IMG/VR virus record: IMGVR_UViG_3300028608_000006
Coordinates: 167,789-231,788 of that record
DNA: 64,000 nucleotides
Direction: 5' to 3' (one strand)
Each line of letters begins with the position of its first letter. Position 1 is the stretch's first letter. A program made the translations under genes and the position numbers. The notes beneath the pieces are model-generated. The model had not been told where the DNA came from and did no database searches. It saw only the letters and a program-made list of their open reading frames with translations. This document shows positions 37,420-55,680 of the stretch, piece by piece.

Positions 37420-39435
37420 TTAAGACGCACCTAACGCCCAGAAGCTCTCAAGTACGGAACCTTGACGGTCCATGGTCATGAAAGTACGCGGGTCGTTAAG
37501 AACGTTCTGTTGTTTCTCAAAGATTAACAAACCGCCTCCGCCCCGGCTGGTGATGCAGTTAATGAAACTGGAGAAGTACTTATCCCCAGAACCGTTAGCC
37601 ATTGCGAAGGACAGGTTGTTTGGATCTCTGGCCAGACAGCAATACAGTAGAGCTTCTACGTGCACTGCGTTAATACCTTTGATCTCCTGGTTAATAAGTG
37701 TCCAGAACTCAGACAATACTTCACCAAAGATCTTCGGCGTTACCACTTGGTTCCGCCATGCGGTATTGCGCTTGTTGAAGGTCATGAAGTTTTCCACACG
37801 AGCCCGGTGCATGTCCAAATCCTCACGAGTATAAGGAAGGGCAAACATCGGAGCCAGCGTGTTCCAATCAGACAGGTCGATGGAGATGAAGCGCTTATCC
37901 ACCGTGTTCCAACCTTTATCCAGCACGAAGCGCAGGAAGTCCAAGGAGAAACGAGCATTACGCGACGACACCGACGTGATAGCCGAATGCTGCTGCGTGG
38001 TCTTGCCACCCATCATGATGTCTTCCACTTGGTAGCGGAAGGTAACGTCAGAGAAGTACGGGAGCTTATCCAGCCCAACGTCGTCCAATACATCGAGCGA
38101 CTTCAGGTCAGACAGGTCCTTAACAATCGACGACTTCAGAATCAGCTCGGAACCCGGTACGCAGATCTCAGCCTTCAGGAAGATTTCATCCCCGTTGGTA
38201 TAAATGATATCTTTGTCCCGGACGTGAGGCACAAACTTCCGCGAGGTTGCGTTGCGGATGTAGTGCTTAGTACTGAGCATTTTCTGCCCCATCGGGTTAC
38301 ATAAGGTAGTACCCGAGTACATTCCCACGTTCGCGTCTTTCATCATCATGACGTTAAACGGGATGGTCGACTTCATTTTGCCGTAGCAGCGACCGCACGG
38401 CTGGCCAGGGTTGTGAGAGTTACAGAACGCCATGCTGCGGAAGGTAACGACGTCACCGGTCTTGATCGTGTCGACGTTGCGTTGATCAATCAGAACCGAT
38501 GAACCGTCCGCTAGGATGATGTACTTGCCCATCAAGGACAAAGCCATCTCCATGTTGAGGATCTTCATAGGAACGCCCACAGTCGTCCCACAGTCGTTCA
38601 TGTGCAAGATGCTGTGTAACGGCGCCGACAGCAAGTGAATCTTGCGGTGGAACCACTCAGCGTCCTTCAGACCCTTACCGTTGTTGATCAGCGACTTACC
38701 GGATGAGTTACGTTCACCCAAGGAGTCAGCCAGGTTGGTGATGCCGTGAGCATACGGCACGTTAACCGAGTTCGGGAAGATGGTGTTGTTCAAGTCAAAC
38801 ACCGAACCACGAATGATCGTCGTCTGGAATGCTTGGTTGATACTCACGCCACCTGTCCGCGCCAGCAGTGCCATGGTGTTGGTATTCAGACTCTCGGCTT
38901 CACGCAGATAGTTACTGAACACTTTCTCGCCATCGTCAATGCTGATCTCGTGCGCCAAGATACGGTCACGGATATCCATGATGCCGACGTCTTCCATCAG
39001 CTCGGCCACAGACTCAGCCGTCGCCGAAATTACCGACGCCTCACTCATCACCACAATCATGTTGTTGAGTTTGGTTTGCCAGATGTGGATCAGTCGCTTG
39101 ATACTGTCAGTCTCAACAGGATCATCGATCTCCGGCATAACGCTTTCCAGAATCCAGTTCACCGGAATGGCCAGAGTATCGTCGCTGTACACCACCTCCT
39201 TATGTTCTGGATTCTTGTTGGACGGGACCAGCTCGTCAATCGAGTAAGCCACGTTGTTGTACTTGCGGTGAACGATCAAGCCTTGCCATGTCAGCATCAT
39301 CGCGAACAGGCAGGACATTGTCTTCTTACCTTCGTCGTCCACCACCTCTACTGCTTGGCGGTGACCACGACAACGAAGGATATCCGCTTCAGTGAGGTTG
39401 GCCCATTCACGCAGGCTAATTTGCATCATGCCCAT
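37420..39435 (-). CDS. Non-virion RNA polymerase beta' C-terminal subunit (phiKZ gp74-like)
   Basis: EWFHRKIHLL...NDCGT; zinc site RSMAFC...CGRCYG. Confidence 0.85.
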   Translation of the reverse strand: MGMMQISLREWANLTEADILRCRGHRQAVEVVDDEGKKTMSCLFAMMLTWQGLIVHRKYNNVAYSIDELVPSNKNPEHKEVVYSDDTLAIPVNWILESVMPEIDDPVETDSIKRLIHIWQTKLNNMIVVMSEASVISATAESVAELMEDVGIMDIRDRILAHEISIDDGEKVFSNYLREAESLNTNTMALLARTGGVSINQAFQTTIIRGSVFDLNNTIFPNSVNVPYAHGITNLADSLGERNSSGKSLINNGKGLKDAEWFHRKIHLLSAPLHSILHMNDCGTTVGVPMKILNMEMALSLMGKYIILADGSSVLIDQRNVDTIKTGDVVTFRSMAFCNSHNPGQPCGRCYGKMKSTIPFNVMMMKDANVGMYSGTTLCNPMGQKMLSTKHYIRNATSRKFVPHVRDKDIIYTNGDEIFLKAEICVPGSELILKSSIVKDLSDLKSLDVLDDVGLDKLPYFSDVTFRYQVEDIMMGGKTTQQHSAITSVSSRNARFSLDFLRFVLDKGWNTVDKRFISIDLSDWNTLAPMFALPYTREDLDMHRARVENFMTFNKRNTAWRNQVVTPKIFGEVLSEFWTLINQEIKGINAVHVEALLYCCLARDPNNLSFAMANGSGDKYFSSFINCITSRGGGGLLIFEKQQNVLNDPRTFMTMDRQGSVLESFWALGAS

Positions 39436-41780
39436 TACAAGCCCCCGTAAATATTGTCAGTACCGCCGGTAACCCCGGTCATGTGCAGGTCTTCACCGAA
39501 TGCTACCGGATTAGGCAAGCGCTTACCCGAGTAACGTGGTTCGGCAGGTGGAGCTGGTTCCGGTTCAGGCTTATTAAGACCGCTCTCAGCCAACTCGAGT
39601 GCCACGCCGCTCAACTGGCTCATATCGAGCAGGTTGTTGATTGGCTCCATGGTTCGGTCAGTCGGGAGTTCATGACGGATGGTGTAACCCGAGTCAGACA
39701 ACATACTTGCAGCCATCTTCACGGCCCGGTTGTTCTGATACTCGTCTGGCTTCACAATCTGATCGATGTTAAACGGATCGTCTGCCCGGATAATACGGCG
39801 CACCATCACTTTACGCAGATCCGGTGAATACGCCATGGCCAATTGCTTAGCCGTTTCCTGACCACCGTGTTGGCTGGTGCGCAGACGACCTTCCGTTTCA
39901 CCCGTGTTACGGTTGCCCTGATCTCGCAGCCAGCTGGAGTACTTGCTGCTGTCGTTCAGTTTAGCCGGCATACCGAACAGGTTGGACTTAGGCAATGCCT
40001 GAGCCGACATATCCGTACCGAACTTATCCAGCATCATGAAGTGCTGGTTACTGATCAGGATTGGGTTCACGGTCTCCACGTACTCACCCAGCGAGTTCAT
40101 GAAGGTTGCCTTCTGCGGTTTGAAGGGATACTTCGCGCGCAGGGCGTTGATGATCGCCACACCATACAACCGGGTGTTACTGCGAACATGGATAGAGATC
40201 ATCTTGTCGCAGCAGTGGTCGACGTAATCCTTAATGTCGTCCGCATTGGTGTAGGTCGCCCGAACGATCTCACCGAACTCCGGGAACCCAGTTTCGCAGA
40301 ACTCGAGGATCATTGCGTAAGCTTCAGCGTACTGACCCAGGTTACGAAGCAACCGCGCTTCTTTCTGGATGTTAACGTTGATGTAGTTGATACTGAGCTC
40401 CATCAACATCGAGTAGATCTGACGACGGAACGCTGGCGTGTTGTTGATGATGACTTCCGCACGAGTACCGTCCGCATAGGTCGGCGCCATGTGGTCCTCG
40501 ATGATGCTCACCGCAACACCTTTGTCGCCGTTCAACCCTGCGAACTTGAACTTGATCTTGCCAGGCACGATTTCGCGCAGCAGGATATTAATGTTCCAGT
40601 CCTTCAACTTGACCCGCTTGATCCCCCGGCTGAGTGGGTTGATCTTGCCAGTGTTGGTATTACGGGTGTAGTTGCCGTATGCCGAGTTAATGAAGGTATC
40701 CAGTTCCAGCGTGATCGGGATGTCATTACCACGGTTGTTCGCGATACGACGTTCGTACCAACGAATCACGTTGTTGTGCATCTCGTTCTGCTTCTTCTCA
40801 TAACGCTCGAGAAGAATGTTGTGTGGCTGCTCGATGTAATCCGTACCGCGATTGTTAGCGCGGTTCTTCATGCGGTCACTCAACACTTCGACCGACATTA
40901 CTTCCGAGTTGATCGGAGCGTAAAACAGTTGATCGTAGGTCAGGTCCGGGATACGCAAAGCTTTACGTGTCAACGACACCAAGGAGTTCTCGGTGATGCG
41001 ACGACGGAAGCCCATGACGATGCCGTCTTCACGAATGCGCTGACCCGATTGTGGGAACGGGCAGTCATTACCTTGTGCATCTTTGTAAAGCATCAACGGA
41101 ACGAATTCTTCCTCGTTCCACTGGAAACCACGTTCGTGCTTGAACATGCACTTCAAACGTTCTTCAGCGTACGATCGAGTCAGCTGAATTGCATCCTCCT
41201 CGGTAACGTGGCTGGAGATCGCTGCAACGCGGGTGTTCATGCCGAAGCACCATTCGCCGCTTTCGCTGATCCGTGGGGACTTGGCGAAGACCGTGCCTTT
41301 CGGGAAGGTGGCCAGTGGCGACATCAGCTTGCGCATCACGTCTTTGTCGTAGACAAACTCGAACCCCACATATGTGTTCTGTGTGTTGTACCGGGGGAGT
41401 TCAAGAATGTCGTACATGTTCTTTTCGTCATTCTTATAAATGACGTACACTTTGTTCCAGGCGTCAGTCATCTCACGCGGGTCTTGGCTCCCCACGAAGA
41501 ACACTTCTTCCACTTGCATGTTGGCTGGCGCTACAATCTGGCGAGCAGTTTGAGCGTAACCTTGTTTCCACTCAAAGCCAGTCACCATCATGCGCTCATC
41601 GGCACCCGAGGTAACTACCGACTTCGGAATCATGTTGCCGGCCATGTACAGACGACCAGCAGAAGCCGACCACGGGAACAGAATCAGGTTGTTACTGACA
41701 CCCACCAGCGCAGGATGGATTTGGTTCGGTCCGCAGATGTATTTATATTTAACATCTTGCTGAGTCTCGTTGTCACTCAT
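39435..41780 (-). CDS. Non-virion RNA polymerase beta C-terminal subunit (phiKZ gp71-73-like)
   Basis: KFAGLNGDKG (GDK...KG motif), EVIINNTPAFRR, MMLDK, DQGNRNTGETE; uninterrupted 781 aa. Confidence 0.85.
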   Translation of the reverse strand: MSDNETQQDVKYKYICGPNQIHPALVGVSNNLILFPWSASAGRLYMAGNMIPKSVVTSGADERMMVTGFEWKQGYAQTARQIVAPANMQVEEVFFVGSQDPREMTDAWNKVYVIYKNDEKNMYDILELPRYNTQNTYVGFEFVYDKDVMRKLMSPLATFPKGTVFAKSPRISESGEWCFGMNTRVAAISSHVTEEDAIQLTRSYAEERLKCMFKHERGFQWNEEEFVPLMLYKDAQGNDCPFPQSGQRIREDGIVMGFRRRITENSLVSLTRKALRIPDLTYDQLFYAPINSEVMSVEVLSDRMKNRANNRGTDYIEQPHNILLERYEKKQNEMHNNVIRWYERRIANNRGNDIPITLELDTFINSAYGNYTRNTNTGKINPLSRGIKRVKLKDWNINILLREIVPGKIKFKFAGLNGDKGVAVSIIEDHMAPTYADGTRAEVIINNTPAFRRQIYSMLMELSINYINVNIQKEARLLRNLGQYAEAYAMILEFCETGFPEFGEIVRATYTNADDIKDYVDHCCDKMISIHVRSNTRLYGVAIINALRAKYPFKPQKATFMNSLGEYVETVNPILISNQHFMMLDKFGTDMSAQALPKSNLFGMPAKLNDSSKYSSWLRDQGNRNTGETEGRLRTSQHGGQETAKQLAMAYSPDLRKVMVRRIIRADDPFNIDQIVKPDEYQNNRAVKMAASMLSDSGYTIRHELPTDRTMEPINNLLDMSQLSGVALELAESGLNKPEPEPAPPAEPRYSGKRLPNPVAFGEDLHMTGVTGGTDNIYGGL

Positions 41781-41887: not shown

Positions 41888-42217
41888 ATGCCAATTCCCA
41901 ATAACGAAATCAATGCCGACAAGGATGTGTTCTTTACTGAACGCTTTAAGACCCTTGTCCGGTCTGAAAAGGAGTTGTTGAAACGCACAGCTCACCAGAA
42001 GCCCATCATTGAAAAGAACGTGTTGTACGCCTACCGTAACGACATCTACCGTCTGCTGCGGCATTTCGAGATCCCGTCGTATATGTGGTGGGCAACAGCT
42101 TACATCAACGGTGTTGAAAACCCCACACAGGACATCACCCATCTGGAATACATCCTCATGATGGATGAGAGCATTCTTGCTTCGGCAATCTCCCGCAGTA
42201 ATACGGTTCAGGGATAA
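41888..42217 (+). CDS. Small LysM-like baseplate protein (T4 gp53/P2 gpX-like)
   Basis: YRLL...MWWATAYINGVENP resembles the lWW-Ia-xN-I-xP pattern; inference. Confidence 0.45.
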   Translation: MPIPNNEINADKDVFFTERFKTLVRSEKELLKRTAHQKPIIEKNVLYAYRNDIYRLLRHFEIPSYMWWATAYINGVENPTQDITHLEYILMMDESILASAISRSNTVQG

Positions 42218-42241: not shown

Positions 42242-42266
42242 GGTAGGGGAGCACTGCTCCCCTACC
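42242..42266 (-). terminator. Intrinsic terminator-like hairpin
   Basis: ggtaggggagc / gctcccctacc stem. Confidence 0.7.
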
Positions 42267-42286: not shown

Positions 42287-43738
42287 TTACCAGGATGCTG
42301 GACCAGCGCCGCCACCGTTGTCCGGGTAGACGCTAGGTGCGATGCCGCCGGCGGTGATTGGCTGGTTCATCATTGCCATCATCGGGTTCTGCATCATCAT
42401 CGGATTCATCATCATCATGGGGTTCATGTTCATCATGTTCTGACCCCCCATCATGTTGTTCATCAGAGCCTGGTTCTGCATTTGCATTGGGTTCAGCTCA
42501 ACGCGTTGCAGGAAGTTACCACGACGGGTGCAGTGGTACATCACAGGACCGCCGGTCATGCCGTTTACCGCATGGTGCAGCACACGACCCAGGTTCTGGT
42601 CGATCTCGGTACGAACATAACGATCGCCCGCTTGCATTGGTGGAGGAGTGAGGTCGTAATCACCTACCATCATGCTTTGGTTGTTGTTACCCTGGTTGTT
42701 GTTTTGCTGTTGATTGGTTTGTTGCATCTGCTGACCACCTTGATTGGTGGACGAGGAGACAGACAACAGGCCAGCCATGTCATTGCGACCCATGGCTTGG
42801 TTGCTGGTTTCTTCCATTGTGTTGTGGCTGTTGTAGTCCATGATCGGGACCTGACGATAAGTTTCTGGCAATTCCTCCAGATACTCATTCCAGTTCATGT
42901 CGATCATGTACACGCCGGCCTTGTCGAAGTCGCCGCGGAAGGTATTTTGTACCTTGTTCAGTTGATCCGCGATTTCGCTGTAGCAGCCCAGGTACGAGAT
43001 CAAACGTGCAGCCACCGGAGTGGTCGACTCGAACTCGTAGTCACCCGGGTTGTTGACCGCCGGCAGGATGGACTGGAACAGATGACGCGCCAGCTTGAGA
43101 GCAGCAATCGACACGCTGTGGTTGTTGAGCTCCACAGTTTGGTTGTCGCTGATGCCTTCCGAGCGAGCCAGGCGTTTAACGATCTCGTTGTAGAACGGGA
43201 ACGAAGGACGAGTCTTGTAGTAGACACGTTCGCCAGTGGCTTTGCTGCGACCGCCGCCTTTGGTCACGGTGAAGTGAATGAAGCGGTTGTCGAGGCCGTC
43301 TTCTTCCAGCTCGATGTGCATACGGGCGAACAGTTGGTTCAGTTCGTCACGCACAGAACGCTTGGCTTCTTTCAGGGGCTCCATCATGTCGATGATGTCC
43401 TGACGCCATGCTTTCTTTGGACGCGCCGCCGAAGCAATGCTGAACAGCACGATCGGGTACGCACGGAAGACCGACAGCAGTTTCATGCAGGTCATCTTGC
43501 GGATGATCTTGAAGACCTCAGTCTCCTTGCTGGTGATGTTCTCGCAGGCTGGGTGGAAGAACACCTTGTTGACCACGTTGCCGTCGAGGATGTTGCTCAG
43601 TGGCAGGTACATGTCCATCTCGTCAATACGGATGGGGAACTCTTCGCCGTTGATCACGAACATGATGCGACCGTCGTCCTTGACAGCGCAGTTCCAGGAT
43701 TTCAACATTGCAGCGTACAGCTTGTTCAATTCGTTCAT
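42287..43738 (-). CDS. Conserved nucleus-module protein (phiKZ gp70-like position) with Q/N/M-rich tail
   Basis: Lies between the PicA-like gene and RNAP beta; low-complexity C-terminus. Confidence 0.6.
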   Translation of the reverse strand: MNELNKLYAAMLKSWNCAVKDDGRIMFVINGEEFPIRIDEMDMYLPLSNILDGNVVNKVFFHPACENITSKETEVFKIIRKMTCMKLLSVFRAYPIVLFSIASAARPKKAWRQDIIDMMEPLKEAKRSVRDELNQLFARMHIELEEDGLDNRFIHFTVTKGGGRSKATGERVYYKTRPSFPFYNEIVKRLARSEGISDNQTVELNNHSVSIAALKLARHLFQSILPAVNNPGDYEFESTTPVAARLISYLGCYSEIADQLNKVQNTFRGDFDKAGVYMIDMNWNEYLEELPETYRQVPIMDYNSHNTMEETSNQAMGRNDMAGLLSVSSSTNQGGQQMQQTNQQQNNNQGNNNQSMMVGDYDLTPPPMQAGDRYVRTEIDQNLGRVLHHAVNGMTGGPVMYHCTRRGNFLQRVELNPMQMQNQALMNNMMGGQNMMNMNPMMMMNPMMMQNPMMAMMNQPITAGGIAPSVYPDNGGGAGPASW

Positions 43739-43755: not shown

Positions 43756-45195
43756 TCAGTAGCCGAAGTGTTCTTTGATGTTGGTGAGGTAGTTCTTCGC
43801 CGAACTCAGACCCACGTCATTACCAGCAATGTTGGTGCTGGTGCGGTTGATGCAGTACGTGGCGTTGGTGAACTGCTTGGTCAAAGCCAACTCACCGTTG
43901 AAGGCGATTGCCACCGTGGTCTCACCGAACATGTAGGAGTCAACTTCCACGTTCATGATGGTTTTCTGGTGGGCGTAAACCGAAGTGTACTTCTGGAAGA
44001 AGTGAGACTTCAGCAGTTCCTTGAATTTCTCCACGCGGTTGATCACGTAGTCATCGTGGTTGAGTACCGACATGGCCTCACCCGGAATGATTACGACGCC
44101 GTCTTCGTCACCGGCCATCCCGTTGAAATCCATCGGGTTGTTGGTGGCGCTGAAGTGGAAACTGGCCAGACCGCTTTGCAGCAACAGGTGAACCGTCAGG
44201 AACGCCAGCTCGGACGCCATCAGTTCGTGCGGGTTAGCACTGCCGTAAGCGGTGCTGGTGGCCAGCGTGTTGTCAGCCGCGAAGTTGCTCGACTGCAACA
44301 TGTTCAGGTTGAGTACGTCAGGGAAGTTGTTGAAGACCGTGTGGATCTCGCCAATCGAGAAACCCTGGAACCCCATCATGCTGTAGCCACCGGTGTTGAA
44401 CATCATGGTGGCGAAGAATGGGTTCTCGGTTACACCGATCTCGCCCAGACCCTGACTGCTCAGGTTATCAGCGATACCCATTTCCAAACCACCGAACTCG
44501 GCTTCTGTACCGGCGTTAGTCGCCAGACGCAGCAGCTCACGGGTGTGGTGAGTTGGGTTCAGGTTCTGGGTCTTCGAGACCACCATGGTCGTCTTGAGGT
44601 CAGTACCCACAGTGCCGTCGTAACGATCAGCACGACCTTCGTTCTCGCAAGCCAGGAAGCCCAGTGCTTCGTTGCCCACATCGATCGGACGCAGAGAGCG
44701 CAGGTTCTTGATCTGGTTAGGATCACCCATCAGGAATTGGTGGGAGGATTCCACAACCGTTTTGGTCATTGGGAAGCCGGAACTGTCTGCCACGTTCTGG
44801 GTCAGTGTATTCCACGCACGGACTGGAACGAATGTGACATCATTACTGATACCTTCGACCGACGCGGTACCGCCCACCAAGTAACCCACAACCGACAGCT
44901 CTTGTTGCACCAAAGCATTCGACTGCACCATGAAGCGCAGCATACCGATACCCCGGCGAACGTTCCAGCCGTCTTCTACTGTTACCATGCCCTGAGGCTG
45001 AGGCGACAGACCACCGGACATGGCGGCAACGTTGTTCAGTGTCGTTGCGGTAATGCCGCCTTGGTGTTGTTCCATCATCAGCTTGTCGAGTGCCATGCTG
45101 TCGATGTTCATGGTGTTGTGGCGGTGTACGTGATCGTGGTTCTGGTTACCCATGCCGAAGACTGCTTGGGTAAGGGTAATCGTTTGTTCGCTCAT
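43756..45195 (-). CDS. picA: Phage-nucleus protein importer PicA/Imp1 (phiKZ gp69-like)
   Basis: 479 aa directly downstream of the sigma-like subunit; assigned mainly by synteny and size. Confidence 0.6.
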   Translation of the reverse strand: MSEQTITLTQAVFGMGNQNHDHVHRHNTMNIDSMALDKLMMEQHQGGITATTLNNVAAMSGGLSPQPQGMVTVEDGWNVRRGIGMLRFMVQSNALVQQELSVVGYLVGGTASVEGISNDVTFVPVRAWNTLTQNVADSSGFPMTKTVVESSHQFLMGDPNQIKNLRSLRPIDVGNEALGFLACENEGRADRYDGTVGTDLKTTMVVSKTQNLNPTHHTRELLRLATNAGTEAEFGGLEMGIADNLSSQGLGEIGVTENPFFATMMFNTGGYSMMGFQGFSIGEIHTVFNNFPDVLNLNMLQSSNFAADNTLATSTAYGSANPHELMASELAFLTVHLLLQSGLASFHFSATNNPMDFNGMAGDEDGVVIIPGEAMSVLNHDDYVINRVEKFKELLKSHFFQKYTSVYAHQKTIMNVEVDSYMFGETTVAIAFNGELALTKQFTNATYCINRTSTNIAGNDVGLSSAKNYLTNIKEHFGY

Positions 45196-45219: not shown

Positions 45220-46776
45220 TTAAGAGTTGTTGTGGCGGATCAGTGCGATGAGCTCGTTCTTGATTTCGACTTCAATCTCCATCGGGAACATAGCTCCTTT
45301 TGCGACGCGGTTGTAAATGTCCGGATCGTCCAGTACCCCATACTCGAGGTTGGAGGTCCAGATACCGTTCCCCAGTTTCTCCAGGAAATCGGTGGCAGAC
45401 ACGATGGCTTCGTTAAACGAGCGCCCTTCATTGTTGCGGGACTGAATGTCACAGATCGACGTGAGGAACTCTTTGTCTTCTGTGTTCAGTTTCAGTCCTT
45501 CCGACAAGCTTCGCAGACCGTCCGGGTTATGGATCGCACCCAGAACAGACGGCAGGTACTTAAAGCCGAGCTCAGCCAACCGAACTTGCCCCAGTGCAAT
45601 CGCGGCCATCAGCTGAGTGTAGTTGAAAGTCCAGAACACCATCGGAGAAACTTCGAAAGCGTAAGTGAGCTGCAATACCTTAAGAATATGGTCGTGCAGT
45701 TCAAAATCCCAGTTTGGAGGTAGGCGGTCATAGACAGCTTCCACCAACTCTACCTGTTTAATGCCTAGGCCCATGCACTGGAACTTGAAGCGATCTTTCA
45801 CACGCTCCTTGTCAGTCTCATCGAACAGGCCAAAGGTAAAGTACTCGGCTTGCTTTTCTTCGTTGGCTGTCTTGGTAGACTCTGCAACTTGATAGCGTTC
45901 ATAGATCGAGCGCTTATCGTCGTCGTCGCCTTCGGAGAAGTCTTTCTTGTTCAGCTTGCTGCCGCTGGTCTCGTGTTGCTTAACCGAGGCGTTGATTGCG
46001 GTGGCCAGGTTCTTGCCGTCTTCCGTTTCCGGGATGACCGCGCAGCACAGGCGGCTGAAGATGGTGTTGTACAGAACCTTCTCGGTAAAGTACTCGTTAC
46101 TGGCAACCGCGTCGACCTGAGACGGGATACCACGTTTGTTGAAGGCAAACTGCACGTAAGTGTACAGCTTGTGCCAGCCCGGCATTTGGTTGATGCGTGG
46201 GTTGTTCTTGATCAACTCGCCGCACACCAGTTCACTGTGACCTGTACCCATGGTCATGTCAAAGCGACTGAGCAGGGAGAAGATGATCGGGAACGCTGCA
46301 CGGCACACAAATGCAAACTTGACCATCTCAACGTAGTCAACGTCGGTGATGGTGGTTTCTGCTGGGTAGTCACCTTTGCTGGCGGCCACACTCAGGTCCG
46401 GCGGGATGGCCAGATGTCGCGAGTACTGAATGAACGCACAGTACTTTGGAATATCGATGAACTCGAACAGGTTGTTAACGATTGGCAGCACTCGAGAGAT
46501 TTCGATGTTGTAGTCAAGAAATTTACCACTCTCAACGATTGCATGTGCCTTCTCGAACAACTTGAACAGTTCGATTTTCTTTTCCGTGGAGAATGTCGCT
46601 TCCACGTATTCATTGAAGCAGTCGAACAGGTTGGTTTCTTTGTCGTCTTTTTCCTTCAATACCTTTTCCAACCGGACGGTGGCTTTACCGTTGAAGCGGA
46701 GGGTCTTATCGTTGAGCGTCACGATAATAGCTTCTATCGTCTTCTTACTGCTCCGGCGGACCTCAACATTAAACAT
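45220..46776 (-). CDS. nvRNAP promoter-specificity (sigma-like) subunit (phiKZ gp68-like)
   Basis: 518-aa helical ORF in the conserved position; synteny and size. Confidence 0.65.
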   Translation of the reverse strand: MFNVEVRRSSKKTIEAIIVTLNDKTLRFNGKATVRLEKVLKEKDDKETNLFDCFNEYVEATFSTEKKIELFKLFEKAHAIVESGKFLDYNIEISRVLPIVNNLFEFIDIPKYCAFIQYSRHLAIPPDLSVAASKGDYPAETTITDVDYVEMVKFAFVCRAAFPIIFSLLSRFDMTMGTGHSELVCGELIKNNPRINQMPGWHKLYTYVQFAFNKRGIPSQVDAVASNEYFTEKVLYNTIFSRLCCAVIPETEDGKNLATAINASVKQHETSGSKLNKKDFSEGDDDDKRSIYERYQVAESTKTANEEKQAEYFTFGLFDETDKERVKDRFKFQCMGLGIKQVELVEAVYDRLPPNWDFELHDHILKVLQLTYAFEVSPMVFWTFNYTQLMAAIALGQVRLAELGFKYLPSVLGAIHNPDGLRSLSEGLKLNTEDKEFLTSICDIQSRNNEGRSFNEAIVSATDFLEKLGNGIWTSNLEYGVLDDPDIYNRVAKGAMFPMEIEVEIKNELIALIRHNNS

Positions 46777-46910: not shown

Positions 46911-47648
46911 TTAGAAGTCGACATCTTCGTCGAACGAATTACCGCCGCTATCGAAGTCGTTACCGCCACCCGAGTTACCGCCGCCACCGCCATTGCCACC
47001 ACGGTTACCGCCAGCCGCCGGAGCGCCATCTTTAGGCTTGGCCGGTTCCCAGCTGGTGGTGTCCATGTTGTCGAGGATCGGACGGTGGAAGTTGACCCAG
47101 GCACGAACAGCCCAACGCGACATCACGCCTTCGTCGATGTAACGCTCGCCAGCATCGTTCTTCATGTAGACGACGGTGTCTTTCGGACCCTTGAACTTGA
47201 ACTGGACTTTGTAGTCGCCCTTGCTGTAGCCCAAGGTGATGCAACCGTCTTTGTCGCGGGTGATGGTCAGGAACACTTGCAGGACTGGCTGGTCGGACAT
47301 GCGACCGCTACCGCCGGCGAATACGAACTGCTTCCACTGCACCGCGATCTGGCGGGTCTTGAAGTCCGGGTTAGTGGTCGCTTCAATCAGTGCATCGAAC
47401 AACACGCCACGGTGCATGTAGTCCATTTCCACTTCTTTGTGGTTGGTCTTAGCGCCTTCTTTATAGACACCGTCGTTGACCTTGAGCATCAGCTTGCCGT
47501 TGTTGGCTTGCTCCCACATCAACTGTGCAGGATACTTCGCACCGGCAACCGGCTCGATGGAAGTTGGGTGCGGCTGACGGTAGTCGTTCAGCAGGATTTT
47601 CTTACGAGGTGTGAAGGCAGGGCGTTGACCGTTGTTGTTACCATTCAT
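46911..47648 (-). CDS. chmC: ChmC-like nucleic-acid-binding nucleus-associated protein (phiKZ gp67-like)
   Basis: Beta-rich core with a Gly/Asn-rich RGG tail ending FDEDVDF; directly upstream of the gp68-like gene. Confidence 0.55.
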   Translation of the reverse strand: MNGNNNGQRPAFTPRKKILLNDYRQPHPTSIEPVAGAKYPAQLMWEQANNGKLMLKVNDGVYKEGAKTNHKEVEMDYMHRGVLFDALIEATTNPDFKTRQIAVQWKQFVFAGGSGRMSDQPVLQVFLTITRDKDGCITLGYSKGDYKVQFKFKGPKDTVVYMKNDAGERYIDEGVMSRWAVRAWVNFHRPILDNMDTTSWEPAKPKDGAPAAGGNRGGNGGGGGNSGGGNDFDSGGNSFDEDVDF

Positions 47649-53446: not shown

Positions 53447-55462
53447 TCAACCGAAGGCTTGACCCATGCCGTAGCCTGCACCGATGCCGGCACCGCTTGG
53501 GTTGTTGCTGCCAACCGAGGTGTAGGTAGCCAGACCAGCGCCCGGTGCGAACACCAGAGTGTTGGAACGGAACGAACCCAGGTTGTTGGCGACGTTCAGA
53601 GTACCGATGCCGTCCATTGCTTCGCCGATAACGGCCATCAGCTGCGGATCCCAGATGTGAGTCTGAGCGAACGAGTTGATGTGGACTGCGCCGTCGAAGA
53701 TCGACTGGTTCAGTTCCAGACGCAGTTTCTGGCAACGAGCTTTGAAGTCCTCGTTGGTCATGCCGTACTGGGTAGCCAGGTACTGCTGGATCGACGCGGT
53801 GCCGCCTTTGCCCTTGAGGTGACCGAGCATCATCTCGTCCAGCTCTTGGGTGTTCAGCTTCTTGCCGCCGATTTCCGCCAGGCCGTTGACAGTGATGACC
53901 GGAGTACGGTGCAGCACAGGCATGCTTGGGTTCCAGCCGGTGGTGGCCTTGATGTTGCGATCAACCAGAGTCGAGAACGCACCATTCGACAGCGCATCCA
54001 GGATGGCGATCATGGTTTGTACTTCTTCCTTGCGGTTCTTGCTCGCCAGGCGAACCAGGAAGTTCTGGATCGAGGCGTGCGGGCCGCATGGGTTGATGTT
54101 GACCTGGAACGTAGCGTGCGGGCTGACGTTCTGACGGATCCAGGAGTTAACCAGGTCGGTGTCAGAAACAGTCTTCTCGGTCAGCACGATGCGGTTAGGC
54201 ACGGTACCAACTTGAGCCAGCATTTCGTCGATACGGACTTCCAGGGAAGCCAGGTTACCGCGAGCGCCAACGCTGTGCTTACGCAGAGCTTCAGCGAACA
54301 CGAAGTTGTTGTTGGTTGCCATCAACAGGTACAGGCCGAAGAAGAACGGCGCCAGACCTTGGTTGTAGCTCATCATCTCGCCAGCTTGCGCTTCTTCGAT
54401 GGTGATCACCGGTGCCAGAGGACGGTAGCCCTGTGGGTAGATGCCGCCGCCCAGGTTCATCATGCGTTGCAGGGCTTCTTGCTGCTGACGACCGGAAGCG
54501 GCTGCCAGTTGAGCGGTGTAGGCCTGGAACGATTGTGCGTTCAGAGCGACCGTTGCGGTAACGCGAGCGATCTCCTTGCTGTTCGCAGCGTAGGCGTTCG
54601 GGTTGTTGATGTTGTTCATGGTGGAAGCGATCACTTCCATGTTGGCCGCCGACAGAGTCTTGCCGGCGGTTACACGACCGCTGATAGCCGAGACGCGGGC
54701 TTCAGCATGACCGTCCTTGCCGTAAGGCGAGGTCTTGTTGGCGAAAGGCGAAGGCAGTTTCTGACCAGCGATGGCCATTTCCTGCGGAACCTTGACCAGC
54801 AGTGCTTCTTCCCATGCACCGGTGAGGTACTGAGACAGAGCGTGCGGACGATCTTTCGGATCACCAGCTTCTGGGTGGTCCAGCATTTCCAGGTCGACAA
54901 CCACCATGTTGATGATGGTAACGGCCTTGACGCCTTTGGATTCGCCGACGCGGGTGTAGTGAGCACGCAGGTTGTCGACGACGTTCTTGTCGGCGTAGCT
55001 GGCCGGGGTCAGTGGCGCCGATACCGATTGCGAAACGCCGGTGCCGAAGCCCATCGGGGTGTTCATGCGGATGTATTCGGAGCTGATGGTCAGGTGCTTG
55101 TTGGAGAACAGAGCGCCCATGACGTACAGCACGCCGCCGATTTCGCGGTAGAAGCAGATGCCAGGCAGAACAGGCGAGATCGACGGAGTCATGGATTCGA
55201 CGTCCGGGATGATGCTCAGTTGCAGCTCGGTCGTGGTGGACGACTTGATGCGCTTGTAGGTTTCGATGATCGCTTCGGTGGTGTCCGCTACTTCTTTCAG
55301 GTTGCGGTTGTCCGAGGTCATCGAGACCAGACCGAACAGACCAGCGAGGCCGCCTTTAGCCAGACCGGAAGTGGTGGTCAGGATTGCTGCGTCATCGGCA
55401 GCATCTTTACCTGCTGCGTTGTTGCCGTCTTCCCAGGAAGATTTGCCAGTGTTAACGCTCAT
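53447..55462 (-). CDS. chmA: Chimallin, major phage-nucleus shell protein
   Basis: 671 aa from ATG at 55462 (SD GGAG); directly upstream of the nvRNAP beta' gene; strong codon bias; Gly/aromatic C-terminal tail. Confidence 0.85.
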   Translation of the reverse strand: MSVNTGKSSWEDGNNAAGKDAADDAAILTTTSGLAKGGLAGLFGLVSMTSDNRNLKEVADTTEAIIETYKRIKSSTTTELQLSIIPDVESMTPSISPVLPGICFYREIGGVLYVMGALFSNKHLTISSEYIRMNTPMGFGTGVSQSVSAPLTPASYADKNVVDNLRAHYTRVGESKGVKAVTIINMVVVDLEMLDHPEAGDPKDRPHALSQYLTGAWEEALLVKVPQEMAIAGQKLPSPFANKTSPYGKDGHAEARVSAISGRVTAGKTLSAANMEVIASTMNNINNPNAYAANSKEIARVTATVALNAQSFQAYTAQLAAASGRQQQEALQRMMNLGGGIYPQGYRPLAPVITIEEAQAGEMMSYNQGLAPFFFGLYLLMATNNNFVFAEALRKHSVGARGNLASLEVRIDEMLAQVGTVPNRIVLTEKTVSDTDLVNSWIRQNVSPHATFQVNINPCGPHASIQNFLVRLASKNRKEEVQTMIAILDALSNGAFSTLVDRNIKATTGWNPSMPVLHRTPVITVNGLAEIGGKKLNTQELDEMMLGHLKGKGGTASIQQYLATQYGMTNEDFKARCQKLRLELNQSIFDGAVHINSFAQTHIWDPQLMAVIGEAMDGIGTLNVANNLGSFRSNTLVFAPGAGLATYTSVGSNNPSGAGIGAGYGMGQAFG

Positions 55463-55547
55463 GTTGTAACTCCATTGCTCTGAAGAATTAGTGGGGTATA
55501 TCGTAATCGCTGTTTTTAACAGTATTGCTAATAGATCTTCTAGCGAT

Positions 55548-55575
55548 TTACCTACTAATGATATGGGTCTCAAAT
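55548..55575 (-). promoter_or_regulatory. Early promoter-like motif upstream of chmA
   Basis: tttacctactaatgatatgggtctcaaa; minus-strand core CCCATATCATTAG. Confidence 0.7.
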
Positions 55576-55680
55576 ATTCTAGCCCCACACCAAATCGGTC
55601 AAAATGCGCTATCGACCCTCCCGGATTTCTCCAGGAGTCTTAACGGTGTATACAATAGGAACATAATTAGGATTTAATTT

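What the first reader, a model, noticed from the sequence alone, without database searches (positions are those of the whole stretch)
42287..42790. Met/Asn/Gln-rich prion-like tail on the protein next to PicA
The C-terminal region contains QQMQQTNQQQNNNQGNNNQSMM and NPMQMQNQALMNNMMGGQNMMNMNPMMMMNPMMMQNPMMAMMNQP (NPMMM repeats) flanking a small beta insert. This composition is typical of eukaryotic condensate or amyloid formers and unusual in phage. Its position in the PicA/ChmC block suggests a condensate or selective-gate role, by analogy with FG-nucleoporins.
Basis: partly seen in the sequence, partly recalled or inferred. Interest (0 to 1): 0.6.

Follow-up and report, generated by a model that had tools for sequence, protein, structure and literature searches.

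The report
Met-rich tail of phage-nucleus protein
The tail is real: a floppy, charge-free, methionine/glutamine/asparagine-rich end on this jumbo phage's copy of a conserved protein (phiKZ gp70 / PhiPA3 gp64) reported at the shell of the phage 'nucleus'; more than a thousand relatives have room for such a tail and those I examined carry one, so it is a testable candidate for part of the shell's selective barrier, but no function is shown.

Summary
The ORF at 42287-43738 (-) encodes 483 aa. Its parts are a confident globular head (1-305), a Q/N-rich disordered linker (306-358), a confident four-stranded beta domain (359-416), a Met-rich disordered stretch (19 M in 40 aa, unique in the 232-kb genome) and a conserved C-terminal motif ending in Trp.

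It is the ortholog of EL gp35, phiKZ gp70 and PhiPA3 gp64 (PHROG 3520). It lies in the conserved block ChmC - gp68 - PicA - this gene - nvRNAP. PhiPA3 gp64 is published as nuclear-shell-localised with unknown function. phiKZ gp70 did not co-purify with Imp1/PicA.

New here: the tail is a family trait. An N-domain profile finds 1358 clusters. The 138 representatives examined carry charge-poor, Q/N/P/G-rich tails of median 169 aa. Their hydrophobic 'stickers' differ by clade (Met here; Tyr, Phe or Trp elsewhere) and tend to sit next to Gly. Sequence drifts while composition holds.

The head matches no solved fold. The beta domain is clade-specific and recurs in one other protein of this phage.

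A cohesive, FG/YG-like brush at the shell is the reading I favour (about 0.35). A plain tether with a docking tip is nearly as likely. Nothing here shows self-association or gating.

The parts
42824..43738 (-). Globular N-terminal head, residues 1-305. This is the conserved core of the phiKZ gp70 / PhiPA3 gp64 / EL gp35 family, with the family-wide signature F61-H62-P63-x-x-E66 ... E72-[ST]73, N261, W283.
   Evidence: AF2 pLDDT 92.6 and pTM 0.91 when folded alone. PHROG 3520, E 4e-109. The profile finds 1358 clusters. Signature residues. No solved-fold match: Foldseek none at E<=0.001 and VIA best Z 5.6. BFVD matches only uncharacterised jumbo-phage proteins.
42665..42823 (-). Disordered linker, residues 306-358. 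It has a short conserved start (about 306-330) followed by a Q/N-rich low-complexity run (about 331-358) that varies by indels between close relatives.
   Evidence: pLDDT <50. Q+N 42% here and a median of 34% in 121 homologues. Indel pattern.
42491..42664 (-). Small folded beta domain, residues 359-416. It is a four-stranded antiparallel meander preceded by a [DE]-[YF]-D-x-T-P-P-P...G-D-R-Y motif and followed by a short helix. It is clade-specific and absent from phiKZ.
   Evidence: pLDDT about 93. Length is 55-58 aa in the sampled homologues (median 57 over all 121), with H388 invariant. Only generic beta-meander matches, Z <= 5.9. A paralogous copy sits at the N-terminus of P0122 in the same genome, 37% identity, E 2e-14. 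No match in the phiKZ genome.
42353..42490 (-). Met-rich, charge-free low-complexity stretch, residues 417-462. Met runs of 1-4 are separated by spacers of 1-5 residues, mostly N, Q, G and P.
   Evidence: 19 M in 40 aa, unique in the genome. pLDDT <50 beyond a weak helix at 417-426. Run and spacer lengths. Median tail Met is 18% (up to 34%) in 121 homologues.
42377..42436 (.). 18-bp tandem DNA repeat, 3.3 copies, underlying the NPMMM-type units.
   Evidence: Tandem Repeats Finder: 83% matches, score 78. Close homologues differ by indels inside the Met runs.
42290..42352 (-). Conserved C-terminal short motif, residues 463-483: P-[IV]-T-A-G-G-[IV]-A-P-S-V-Y-P-D, then a G-rich stretch, then a terminal Trp.
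   Evidence: An aromatic residue lies within the last three positions in 120 of 121 homologues. The last residue is W in 49, F in 27 and Y in 23. Motif alignment.
42242..42266 (-). Intrinsic-terminator-like hairpin (11 pairs, 8 G-C) with a T-rich tail, just after the stop codon at 42287-42289.
43756..45195 (-). Upstream neighbour, 17 bp away: the PicA / Imp1 ortholog (479 aa).
   Evidence: PHROG 3141, E 2e-88, the same family as phiKZ gp69. 58% identical to EL gp34.
45220..46776 (-). Ortholog of phiKZ gp68, a subunit of the non-virion RNA polymerase (518 aa).
   Evidence: PHROG 3209, the same as phiKZ gp68. 64% identical to EL gp33.
46911..47648 (-). ChmC / Imp6 ortholog (245 aa), with its own G/N-rich tail.
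   Evidence: PHROG 3284, the same as phiKZ gp67. 50% identical to EL gp32.
37420..41780 (-). Downstream non-virion RNA polymerase beta and beta-prime-like genes (781 and 671 aa).
   Evidence: PHROGs 3295 and 3015. Similar to phiKZ gp71 and gp74.
53447..55462 (-). Chimallin (ChmA), the major nuclear-shell protein of the same phage. The ORF is open up to 55588, but ATG at 55462 fits the homologues' lengths.
   Evidence: PHROG 4795 'nuclear shell protein', E 5e-139. Homologues are mostly 655-696 aa, most near 670, and carry PF25677.

Best explanation
Shown:
- The gene encodes this EL-like chimallivirus's ortholog of phiKZ gp70 / PhiPA3 gp64 / EL gp35. This is a conserved chimallivirus protein encoded between PicA/Imp1 and the non-virion RNA polymerase.
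- Its order of parts is: family-specific folded head, Q/N-rich disordered linker, small clade-specific beta domain, Met-rich charge-free disordered stretch, then a short conserved C-terminal motif ending in an aromatic residue.

From the literature: the PhiPA3 ortholog localises to the ChmA nuclear shell.

Inferred: the head, possibly with the beta domain and the C-terminal tip, holds the protein at the shell. The disordered tail works as a sticker-and-spacer domain. Met, which other clades replace with Tyr, Phe or Trp, supplies weak hydrophobic contacts. The G/N/Q/P spacers with almost no charge keep the chain flexible and cohesive. Many copies at the shell would then form a cohesive brush or small condensate. 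Such a layer could concentrate or filter macromolecules crossing the shell, either protein import near PicA or mRNA leaving the polymerase with ChmC. This is the manner of FG-nucleoporin or PEX13 YG domains, by analogy only and not by descent.
For: Identity and context:
- PHROG 3520 for both this protein and phiKZ gp70.
- 63% identity to EL gp35 and 21% identity (E 8e-9) to phiKZ gp70.
- All four genes of the block share PHROGs with phiKZ gp67-70.
- The same gene order holds in a 24%-identical metagenomic relative.
- Chimallin is encoded in the same window.

Disorder and composition:
- pLDDT <50 for 306-358 and 427-483.
- No K or R and one acidic residue in the last 67 aa.
- 19 M in 40 aa, unique in the genome.

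Selection on composition rather than sequence:
- In 121 homologues, mean pairwise identity is 0.57 in the head and 0.27-0.32 in the low-complexity parts.
- Across the same set the tail medians stay at M 18%, Q+N 22%, G 15% and charged residues 1.5%.
- Close relatives differ by indels within the Met runs.

Family-wide trait:
- The N-domain profile finds 1358 clusters; most of the 150 listed proteins are 390-570 aa, leaving room for a tail.
- In 138 representatives the tails have median length 169 aa, Q+N 20%, P 14% and charged residues 9%.
- Among the 127 distant ones, stickers (M+Y+W+F) make up 8-16% of the tail (10th-90th percentile). The dominant sticker is Y in 55, M in 42, F in 20 and W in 10.
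- Gly sits next to aromatic residues 2.4 times more often than composition predicts.

Literature:
- No pore large enough for proteins has been seen in the shell, and a phase-like route is raised as a possibility (PMC11087766).
Against: - No experiment or computation here shows self-association, condensation or selectivity.
- Met spacing is much denser than in FG repeats, with a median sticker gap of 3 aa.
- The tail is short, 39 plus 58 charge-free residues, against hundreds of residues in nucleoporins.
- phiKZ gp70 did not co-purify with Imp1/PicA and is listed as a nuclear rather than shell protein (bioRxiv 10.1101/2024.03.27.586873).
- The complex prediction of ChmA with residues 356-483 gave no verdict.
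- The function of the head is unknown, so the tail could serve something unrelated to traffic.
- The terminal aromatic residue, conserved in 120 of 121 homologues, fits a simple docking tip at least as well.
Confidence: 0.35

Rival explanations
1. Tether plus docking tip. The low-complexity stretches are only flexible spacers. The working parts are the folded beta domain and the last ~20 residues, whose terminal aromatic side chain and carboxylate plug into a pocket on a partner (ChmA, PicA, the polymerase or the protein's own head). This is how the disordered linker and C-terminal tip of bacterial SSB or T7 gp2.5 work.
For: - An aromatic residue lies within the last three positions in 120 of 121 homologues, next to a conserved P-S-V-Y-P-D-like motif.
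- The low-complexity parts tolerate indels and drift.
- The beta domain is a portable module reused at the N-terminus of another protein, P0122, in this phage.
- Distant relatives carry a short conserved G-x-x-W-type motif in mid-tail instead of the beta domain.
- ChmA's own C-terminal tail is likewise G/N/S-rich and ends in a conserved Phe-Gly.
Against: - A mere spacer need not exclude charge or keep 8-16% hydrophobic stickers in the distant clades sampled.
- Sequence profiles of the target's C-terminus and ChmA's C-terminus show no similarity: hhalign P 0.36 against 0.79 for a reversed control.
- In distant clades the last residue is mostly I, V, L or R rather than aromatic.
- No partner was identified, and the complex prediction gave no verdict.
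Confidence: 0.3
2. Intranuclear transcription or mRNA-handling hub. The protein works inside the phage nucleus with the non-virion RNA polymerase or nascent mRNA. Its prion-like tail would cluster these factors, in the manner of FUS/EWS/TAF15-type low-complexity domains.
For: - The gene sits inside the polymerase gene block and appears co-transcribed with PicA, being 17 bp apart with a terminator only after it.
- phiKZ gp70 is listed among nuclear proteins (bioRxiv 10.1101/2024.03.27.586873).
- Distant tails hold G-Y-Q-P repeats resembling FET and Sup35-type repeats; the resemblance is from my own knowledge.
- The head's best, weak, structural matches are RNA-binding HPF/RaiA and dsRBD folds, Z 4-5.6.
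Against: - Z 5.6 is under the noise mark of about 8 quoted with the search.
- The head is neutral to slightly acidic, pI about 6.1, across the family.
- There are no RGG or other basic motifs.
- PhiPA3 gp64 was seen at the shell, not in the lumen (PMC10643120).
Confidence: 0.15
3. Methionine-specific chemistry. The Met cluster would act as a redox buffer or switch (reversible Met oxidation, as in yeast Pbp1/ataxin-2), or bind Cu(I) as Mets motifs do, or offer a promiscuous 'methionine bristle' surface for hydrophobic peptides like the SRP54 M domain.
For: - Met reaches 28-34% of the tail in this clade, and M-x-M and M-x-x-M spacings are frequent.
- phiKZ-like tails are also Met-rich: 13% in one representative, and the phiKZ gp70 tail itself.
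Against: - Most clades replace Met with Tyr, Phe or Trp while keeping the rest of the design. Median Met is 3% in distant tails. The shared property is therefore hydrophobic stickiness, not thioether chemistry.
- The known Cu(I) Mets motifs act outside the cytoplasm (from my own knowledge).
- The SRP54 M domain is folded, whereas this stretch is predicted disordered.
Confidence: 0.06
4. Prion or functional amyloid. The Q/N-rich and Met-rich stretches would drive a self-templating cross-beta assembly.
For: Q+N is 42% in 306-358, and the stretch is charge-free and predicted disordered.
Against: - The Q/N run is only about 39 charge-free residues and is cut off from the second stretch by a folded domain.
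- The second stretch holds 12% Pro and 12% Gly, and distant tails hold 14% Pro. Both disfavour cross-beta structure.
- A lytic infection lasting about an hour leaves little use for heritable conformers (inference).
Confidence: 0.03
5. Functionless slippage product. Replication slippage on ATG-rich repeats would have inflated a tolerated, unimportant C-terminus.
For: An 18-bp tandem repeat lies in the region, and close relatives show indel polymorphism within the Met runs.
Against: - Tail length, charge depletion and sticker content were maintained in every set examined: 121 close homologues and 138 representatives of the 1358-cluster family.
- The conserved motif and terminal aromatic residue lie downstream of the repeats and stay in frame.
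Confidence: 0.06

Closest known systems
PhiPA3 gp64 / phiKZ gp70 / EL gp35 (PHROG 3520; chimallivirus conserved gene block)
   Same: Homologous head, the same position between PicA/Imp1 and the non-virion polymerase, and a disordered low-charge C-terminal tail. phiKZ gp70's tail is also Met-rich. PhiPA3 gp64 is published as nuclear-shell-associated with unknown function (PMC10643120).
   Different: This protein and the EL-like, RisingSun, Miami and Vibrio-phage clade carry an extra folded ~57-aa beta domain inside the tail, which phiKZ lacks. They also end in a terminal aromatic residue, whereas phiKZ gp70 ends in Leu-Leu. I found no paper that describes the tail.
FG-nucleoporin cohesive domains (e.g. 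GLFG type with N/Q-rich spacers)
   Same: Disordered and nearly charge-free, with hydrophobic stickers next to Gly in N/Q/G/P-rich spacers. Composition is conserved while sequence drifts, and the protein is associated with the boundary of a genome-containing compartment (the nucleoporin properties are from my own knowledge).
   Different: - No homology.
- The sticker is Met, not Phe; FG dipeptides occur at only 0.24 per 100 aa.
- Stickers are far denser and the domain roughly ten times shorter.
- No transport-receptor system is known.
- No phase behaviour has been shown.
PEX13 YG domain (peroxisomal import 'nuclear-pore-like phase')
   Same: A Tyr/Gly-rich, uncharged low-complexity domain on a protein at the boundary of a compartment that imports folded proteins. 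Tyr is the commonest dominant sticker in the distant clades sampled (55 of 127 tails), and aromatic residues sit next to Gly 2.4 times more often than expected. The idea is cited in the PicA paper's discussion (PMC11087766).
   Different: In the window's own protein the sticker is Met. There is no membrane anchor, no homology and no evidence of a meshwork.
Pbp1/ataxin-2 Met-rich low-complexity domain (yeast)
   Same: A Met-rich disordered region that could self-associate through Met side chains (the properties of Pbp1 are from my own knowledge).
   Different: No homology. Pbp1's Met residues are sparser. Redox control is untested here and unlikely to be the shared family property, because most clades use Tyr, Phe or Trp.
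ChmC / Imp6 (the neighbour two genes upstream)
   Same: A shell-associated chimallivirus protein in the same gene block, with a folded domain followed by a low-complexity, G/N-rich tail. It is published as a nuclear-shell-associated RNA-binding protein (bioRxiv 10.1101/2023.09.22.559000).
   Different: Unrelated sequence families (PHROG 3284 against 3520). ChmC's tail ends in an acidic-aromatic tip, whereas this one is uncharged. ChmC binds Imp1/PicA directly, and gp70 did not in the published test.
Bacterial SSB / T7 gp2.5 disordered linker with C-terminal tip
   Same: A folded domain, then a G/Q/P-rich disordered linker, then a short conserved C-terminal motif ending in an aromatic residue (the SSB properties are from my own knowledge).
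   Different: The tip here is not acidic, and no OB-fold match appeared in any fold search.

Membership tests
phiKZ gp70 / PhiPA3 gp64 family (PHROG 3520) | Sequence match to the family profile over the whole head | tested here: met
   phrog_3520, E 4.1e-109, residues 1-465. phiKZ gp70 hits the same PHROG at E 4e-122. Pairwise E 8e-9 to phiKZ gp70 and 63% identity to EL gp35.
phiKZ gp70 / PhiPA3 gp64 family (PHROG 3520) | Position in the conserved block ChmC - gp68 - PicA - gp70 - nvRNAP beta/beta-prime | tested here: met
   The window's gene order matches phiKZ and EL. PHROG identities of all neighbours match. The same order holds in a 24%-identical relative, L009.
phiKZ gp70 / PhiPA3 gp64 family (PHROG 3520) | Encoded by a chimallin-encoding (nucleus-forming) phage | tested here: met
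   A ChmA ortholog lies at window 53447-55588 (PHROG 4795 'nuclear shell protein', E 5e-139). Its homologues carry PF25677.
phiKZ gp70 / PhiPA3 gp64 family (PHROG 3520) | Localisation to the phage nuclear shell during infection | not testable with these tools
   Known only for PhiPA3 gp64 (PMC10643120). phiKZ gp70 is listed as nuclear (bioRxiv 10.1101/2024.03.27.586873).
FG-nucleoporin-like / PEX13 YG-like cohesive domain (functional class, not a homology family) | Intrinsic disorder of the repeat region | tested here: met
   AF2 pLDDT <50 for 306-358 and 427-483, with a 121-sequence alignment.
FG-nucleoporin-like / PEX13 YG-like cohesive domain (functional class, not a homology family) | Near absence of charged residues | tested here: met
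   No K or R and one D/E in the last 67 aa. Median charged content is 1.5% in 121 homologues and 9% in distant tails.
FG-nucleoporin-like / PEX13 YG-like cohesive domain (functional class, not a homology family) | Repeated aromatic (Phe or Tyr) stickers next to Gly, separated by polar spacers of about 10-20 residues | tested here: inconclusive
   Here the sticker is Met, with a median gap of 3 aa and FG at 0.24 per 100 aa. Distant relatives use Y, F or W, with Gly adjacent at 2.4-fold enrichment and a median gap of 5 aa.
FG-nucleoporin-like / PEX13 YG-like cohesive domain (functional class, not a homology family) | Forms a cohesive phase or hydrogel that admits selected clients | not testable with these tools
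   Needs purified protein.
FG-nucleoporin-like / PEX13 YG-like cohesive domain (functional class, not a homology family) | Homology to nucleoporins or PEX13 | tested here: not met
   No Pfam family. The profile against PDB sequences gave only a Q-rich stretch of Snf5 at E 0.52. No structural match was found.
Yeast-type prion-like domain / amyloid former | Long uninterrupted Q/N-rich, charge-poor core (PLAAC uses about 60 residues) | tested here: not met
   The Q/N-rich run is 39 charge-free residues (321-359) and ends at a folded domain. The 58-residue second run is Met-rich, with 25% Q+N. PLAAC itself was not run.
Yeast-type prion-like domain / amyloid former | Self-templating cross-beta aggregation | not testable with these tools
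   Needs thioflavin-T, SDD-AGE or seeding assays. Pro 12% and Gly 12% in the tail argue against it.
SSB-type disordered linker with C-terminal tip | OB-fold DNA-binding core | tested here: not met
   No OB-fold appears among the fold-search matches for either folded domain.
SSB-type disordered linker with C-terminal tip | Acidic tip ending in a hydrophobic or aromatic residue | tested here: not met
   The terminal aromatic residue is conserved in 120 of 121 homologues, but the last 20 residues hold a single Asp.

The most novel reading that the evidence does not exclude
Chimalliviruses encode their own counterpart of an FG/YG 'selective phase'. In this reading the gp70/gp64 family places a cohesive, charge-free sticker-and-spacer tail at the protein shell of the phage nucleus. 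The sticker residue has been swapped between clades (Met, Tyr, Phe, Trp) while the physics stays the same. This layer, working with PicA and/or ChmC, would be part of the long-sought route by which proteins or mRNA cross the shell.
Probability: 0.2. Interest if true: 0.85.

Novelty: new variant of a known kind. Interest (0 to 1): 0.55.

Why it matters
How folded proteins get into the phage nucleus, and how mRNA gets out, is the main open question for these phages. PicA/Imp1 gives selectivity, but no channel has been seen.

This gene is conserved beside PicA, and its PhiPA3 ortholog sits at the shell. It carries a tail with the physical hallmarks of the cohesive domains that gate nuclear pores and peroxisomes. 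The natural sticker swaps between clades (Met, Tyr, Phe, Trp) offer ready-made variants for tail-swap tests.

If the tail proves to be only a tether, the conserved terminal aromatic tip and the portable beta domain still point to a specific docking partner that could be found.

Tried and rejected
Head and beta domain, no function found:
- Pfam gave no family.
- A profile against PDB sequences gave only a Q-rich stretch of Snf5 at E 0.52.
- Foldseek against PDB gave nothing at E<=0.001 for the full model or the head alone.
- VIA-align over 48,161 chains gave a best Z of 5.9 for the beta domain (generic beta-meanders: PepSY, WRKY, propeller blades, PC4). For the head the best was Z 5.6 to HPF/RaiA. 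Both are below the noise mark of about 8, so I kept HPF/dsRBD only as a weak lead.
- The ESM Atlas searches by features and by shape gave nothing usable.
- BFVD returned only uncharacterised jumbo-phage homologues.

ChmA-tail mimicry:
- ChmA's C-terminus is also G/N/S-rich and ends in Phe-Gly.
- Profile-profile comparison with the target's C-terminus showed no similarity: hhalign P 0.36 against 0.79 for a reversed control. I rejected mimicry as a sequence-level claim.

Complex prediction:
- ChmA (671 aa) with residues 356-483 gave 'no answer', ipSAE 0.07 and 0.29 against a mark of 0.32. This counts neither for nor against binding.
- PicA, ChmC, the polymerase and self-association were not tested, because only one job was available.

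The second protein with the beta domain (P0122):
- No Pfam or PHROG family and no match in the phage record collection.
- Its only match in EL is to gp35's own beta domain.
- One ortholog was found, in the nearest sister contig.

Other:
- The 109-aa ORF on the opposite strand at 41888-42217 is unrelated to EL gp36.
- Paper searches for a description of this tail found none.
- The essentiality papers I read do not name gp70 in their main text.
- PLAAC and dedicated phase-separation predictors were not available. I did not type reference FG, YG or Pbp1 sequences from memory, so there is no direct numerical comparison with them.
Full report
**What is there**

The finding lies in the 3' third of an ORF at window 42287-43738 on the minus strand, encoding 483 aa.

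The protein's composition differs sharply by region:

| Region | Main composition |
|---|---|
| 306-358 | Q+N 42% |
| 416-483 | M 28%, N 16%, G 12%, P 12% |
| Long ORFs of the window | M 2.7% |

- The last 67 residues hold no Lys or Arg and one acidic residue.
- The window is the last 64 kb of a 231,788-bp viral record.
- Scanning every ORF of that genome, the best 40-residue window here holds 19 Met against 8 for the runner-up. For Q+N the figures are 19 against 12.
- Part of the Met run is an 18-bp tandem repeat at 42377-42436.
- An 11-bp-stem terminator follows the stop codon.

**Architecture**

AlphaFold2 with 121 homologues gives five parts (motif):

| Residues | Part | Confidence |
|---|---|---|
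| 1-305 | Folded head | most 10-residue blocks pLDDT >90 |
| 306-358 | Disordered linker | pLDDT <50 |
| 361-416 | Four-stranded beta domain with a short following helix | pLDDT about 93 |
| 427-483 | Disordered tail | pLDDT <50 |
| last ~20 | Conserved motif P-[IV]-T-A-G-G-[IV]-A-P-S-V-Y-P-D ... W | within the disordered tail |

**Identity and context**

- The protein belongs to PHROG 3520.
- It is 63% identical to Pseudomonas phage EL gp35.
- It is 21% identical (E 8e-9) to phiKZ gp70, which falls in the same PHROG.

Reading along the minus strand, the neighbours are:
1. ChmC/Imp6 ortholog (46911-47648)
2. gp68-like polymerase subunit (45220-46776)
3. PicA/Imp1 ortholog (43756-45195, 17 bp upstream)
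4. this gene
5. non-virion RNA polymerase beta and beta-prime (37420-41780)

Each neighbour shares its PHROG with phiKZ gp67, gp68, gp69, or the polymerase subunits. Chimallin lies 10 kb upstream. The same gene order holds in a metagenomic relative only 24% identical.

**What is published on this family**

- Enustun et al. (PMC10643120) found PhiPA3 gp64, the ortholog of phiKZ gp70, by proximity labelling. [quoted passage not shown] Its function was left unknown.
- The Imp preprint (10.1101/2024.03.27.586873) lists gp70 among nuclear proteins. It reports that FLAG-tagged gp70, unlike gp67, did not co-purify with Imp1 in E. coli.
- Two reviews and the PicA paper do not mention gp64 or gp70, and the three functional-genomics papers I read do not name gp70.
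- Searches for a description of its low-complexity tail found nothing.

**The tail is a family trait (new here)**

In 121 homologues of 37-94% identity:
- Mean pairwise identity is 0.57 in the head and 0.45 in the beta domain.
- It is only 0.27-0.32 in the low-complexity parts.
- The tail nevertheless keeps medians of M 18% (up to 34%), Q+N 22%, G 15% and charged residues 1.5%.
- 95 of the 121 tails hold at least 10% Met.
- 120 of 121 have an aromatic residue within the last three positions.
- Close relatives differ by indels inside the Met and Q/N runs.

A profile of the head alone, searched against 1.84 billion representatives, finds 1358 clusters. Most of the 150 listed proteins are 390-570 aa long, which leaves room for a tail on each.

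In 138 representatives the tails look like this:
- Median length 169 aa.
- Q+N 20%, P 14%, G 9%, charged residues 9%.

Among the 127 distant representatives:
- M+Y+W+F makes up 8-16% of the tail.
- The dominant sticker is Tyr in 55, Met in 42, Phe in 20 and Trp in 10.
- Gly is 2.4-fold enriched next to aromatic residues.
- Some tails carry G-Y-Q-P or G-W-G-Q-P repeats.

So the property held in common is a flexible, charge-poor chain with hydrophobic stickers. The Met-rich version belongs to the EL-like clade and, more mildly, to phiKZ-like phages.

**The folded parts**

The head, folded alone, reaches pLDDT 92.6 but matches nothing solved:
- Foldseek found nothing at E<=0.001.
- VIA-align's best is Z 5.6 to ribosome hibernation factors. 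That family fills roughly half of the top 20 rows, but at rmsd mostly 4-5 A and below the noise mark.
- BFVD returns only uncharacterised jumbo-phage proteins.

The head's family-wide signature is F-H-P-x-x-E ... E-[ST], plus N261 and W283. Its pI is about 6.1.

The beta domain gives only generic meander matches. It is missing from the phiKZ genome. Distant relatives instead show a short G-x-x-W-type motif in mid-tail.

Unexpectedly, the same phage reuses the beta domain at the N-terminus of an unrelated 408-aa protein, P0122 at G000:C1:70468-71694 (37% identity, E 2e-14). P0122 has an ortholog only in the nearest sister contig. The domain therefore looks like a portable interaction module.

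**Mechanism**

I favour a shell-associated protein whose tail forms a cohesive brush or small condensate that contributes to selective traffic. I give this about 0.35.

The argument rests on three things:
- selection for charge depletion plus stickers in every clade sampled;
- the published shell localisation of the ortholog;
- the conserved linkage to PicA, ChmC and the polymerase.

These steps are all inferred. Nothing here shows self-association or gating.

The rivals, in order:
- **Tether with a docking tip (0.3).** The conserved terminal aromatic residue and the portable beta domain fit this well.
- **Intranuclear transcription or mRNA hub (0.15).**
- **Met-specific redox, copper or 'bristle' chemistry (0.06).** This is weakened because most clades use Tyr, Phe or Trp instead.
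- **Functionless slippage product (0.06).**
- **Amyloid or prion (0.03).** The runs are short and rich in Pro and Gly.

**Tests of anchoring**

- ChmA's own C-terminal tail is G/N/S-rich and ends in Phe-Gly. However, profile comparison with the target's C-terminus shows no similarity.
- A complex prediction of ChmA with residues 356-483 returned no verdict. I do not count it either way.

**Verdict**

The gene is an ordinary ortholog of a known, uncharacterised, shell-associated chimallivirus protein. The tail is real, strongly non-random and conserved in kind in every set of relatives examined (121 close homologues and 138 representatives of the 1358 clusters). I found no published description of it.

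The analogy to FG or YG domains is physically reasonable but unproven. There is no homology to them, and the amyloid reading is unlikely.

Noticed in passing
Same genome, outside the window: G000:C1:70468-71694 (-), = L004:550-1776 (-), protein P0122: A 408-aa protein of unknown function carries a paralogous copy of the small beta domain at its N-terminus, including the D-x-T-P-P-P ... G-D-R-Y motif (37% identity, E 2e-14). It sits next to tail-fibre-like genes. It matches no PHROG or Pfam family and nothing in the phage record collection. The only ortholog found is in the nearest sister contig (70% identity).
   Followed up: partly
window 46911-47648 (-): The ChmC/Imp6 ortholog ends in a G/N-rich low-complexity tail (15 Gly in 40 aa) with an acidic-aromatic tip, F-D-E-D-V-D-F. 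This resembles the linker and tip of bacterial SSB. It is a second low-complexity tail in the same gene block.
   Followed up: no
window 53447-55588 (-): The chimallin ORF is open from GTG at 55588 (713 aa). Its homologues are mostly 655-696 aa, most near 670, so ATG at 55462 (671 aa) is the likelier start. Its C-terminal tail is G/N/S-rich, and Phe is the penultimate residue in 47 of 59 homologues. phiKZ chimallin's tail (L011) is itself M/G-rich and ends T-W-Y.
   Followed up: partly
window 42824-43738 (-), residues 68-275 of the head: Roughly half of the top 20 structure matches for the head (at least 11 rows) are ribosome hibernation factors (HPF, RaiA, pY), with dsRBDs lower down. All are weak: Z 4-5.6, rmsd mostly 4-5 A, about 90 aligned residues. 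This may reflect only a common alpha/beta arrangement, or it may hint at RNA or ribosome binding.
   Followed up: partly
window 41888-42217 (+): A 109-aa ORF lies on the opposite strand, between the terminator of the target gene and the polymerase beta gene. At this position EL has gp36 and a transposase instead. The ORF shows no similarity to EL gp36.
   Followed up: partly
Distant homologues P0137-P0266 (tails); L002:6328-7629 (phiKZ gp70): Relatives that lack the beta domain often carry a short conserved motif in mid-tail, of the type G-x-S-W-x-D-V. In phiKZ the counterpart is S-I-Q-D-L-L. It lies roughly where the beta domain sits in the EL-like clade and may be an older docking element that the domain replaced.
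   Followed up: partly
window 43756-43738 junction and 42242-42266: PicA and the target gene are 17 bp apart with no terminator between them. A strong hairpin terminator follows the target gene. This suggests the two are co-transcribed as the end of an operon, separately from the polymerase genes downstream.
   Followed up: no
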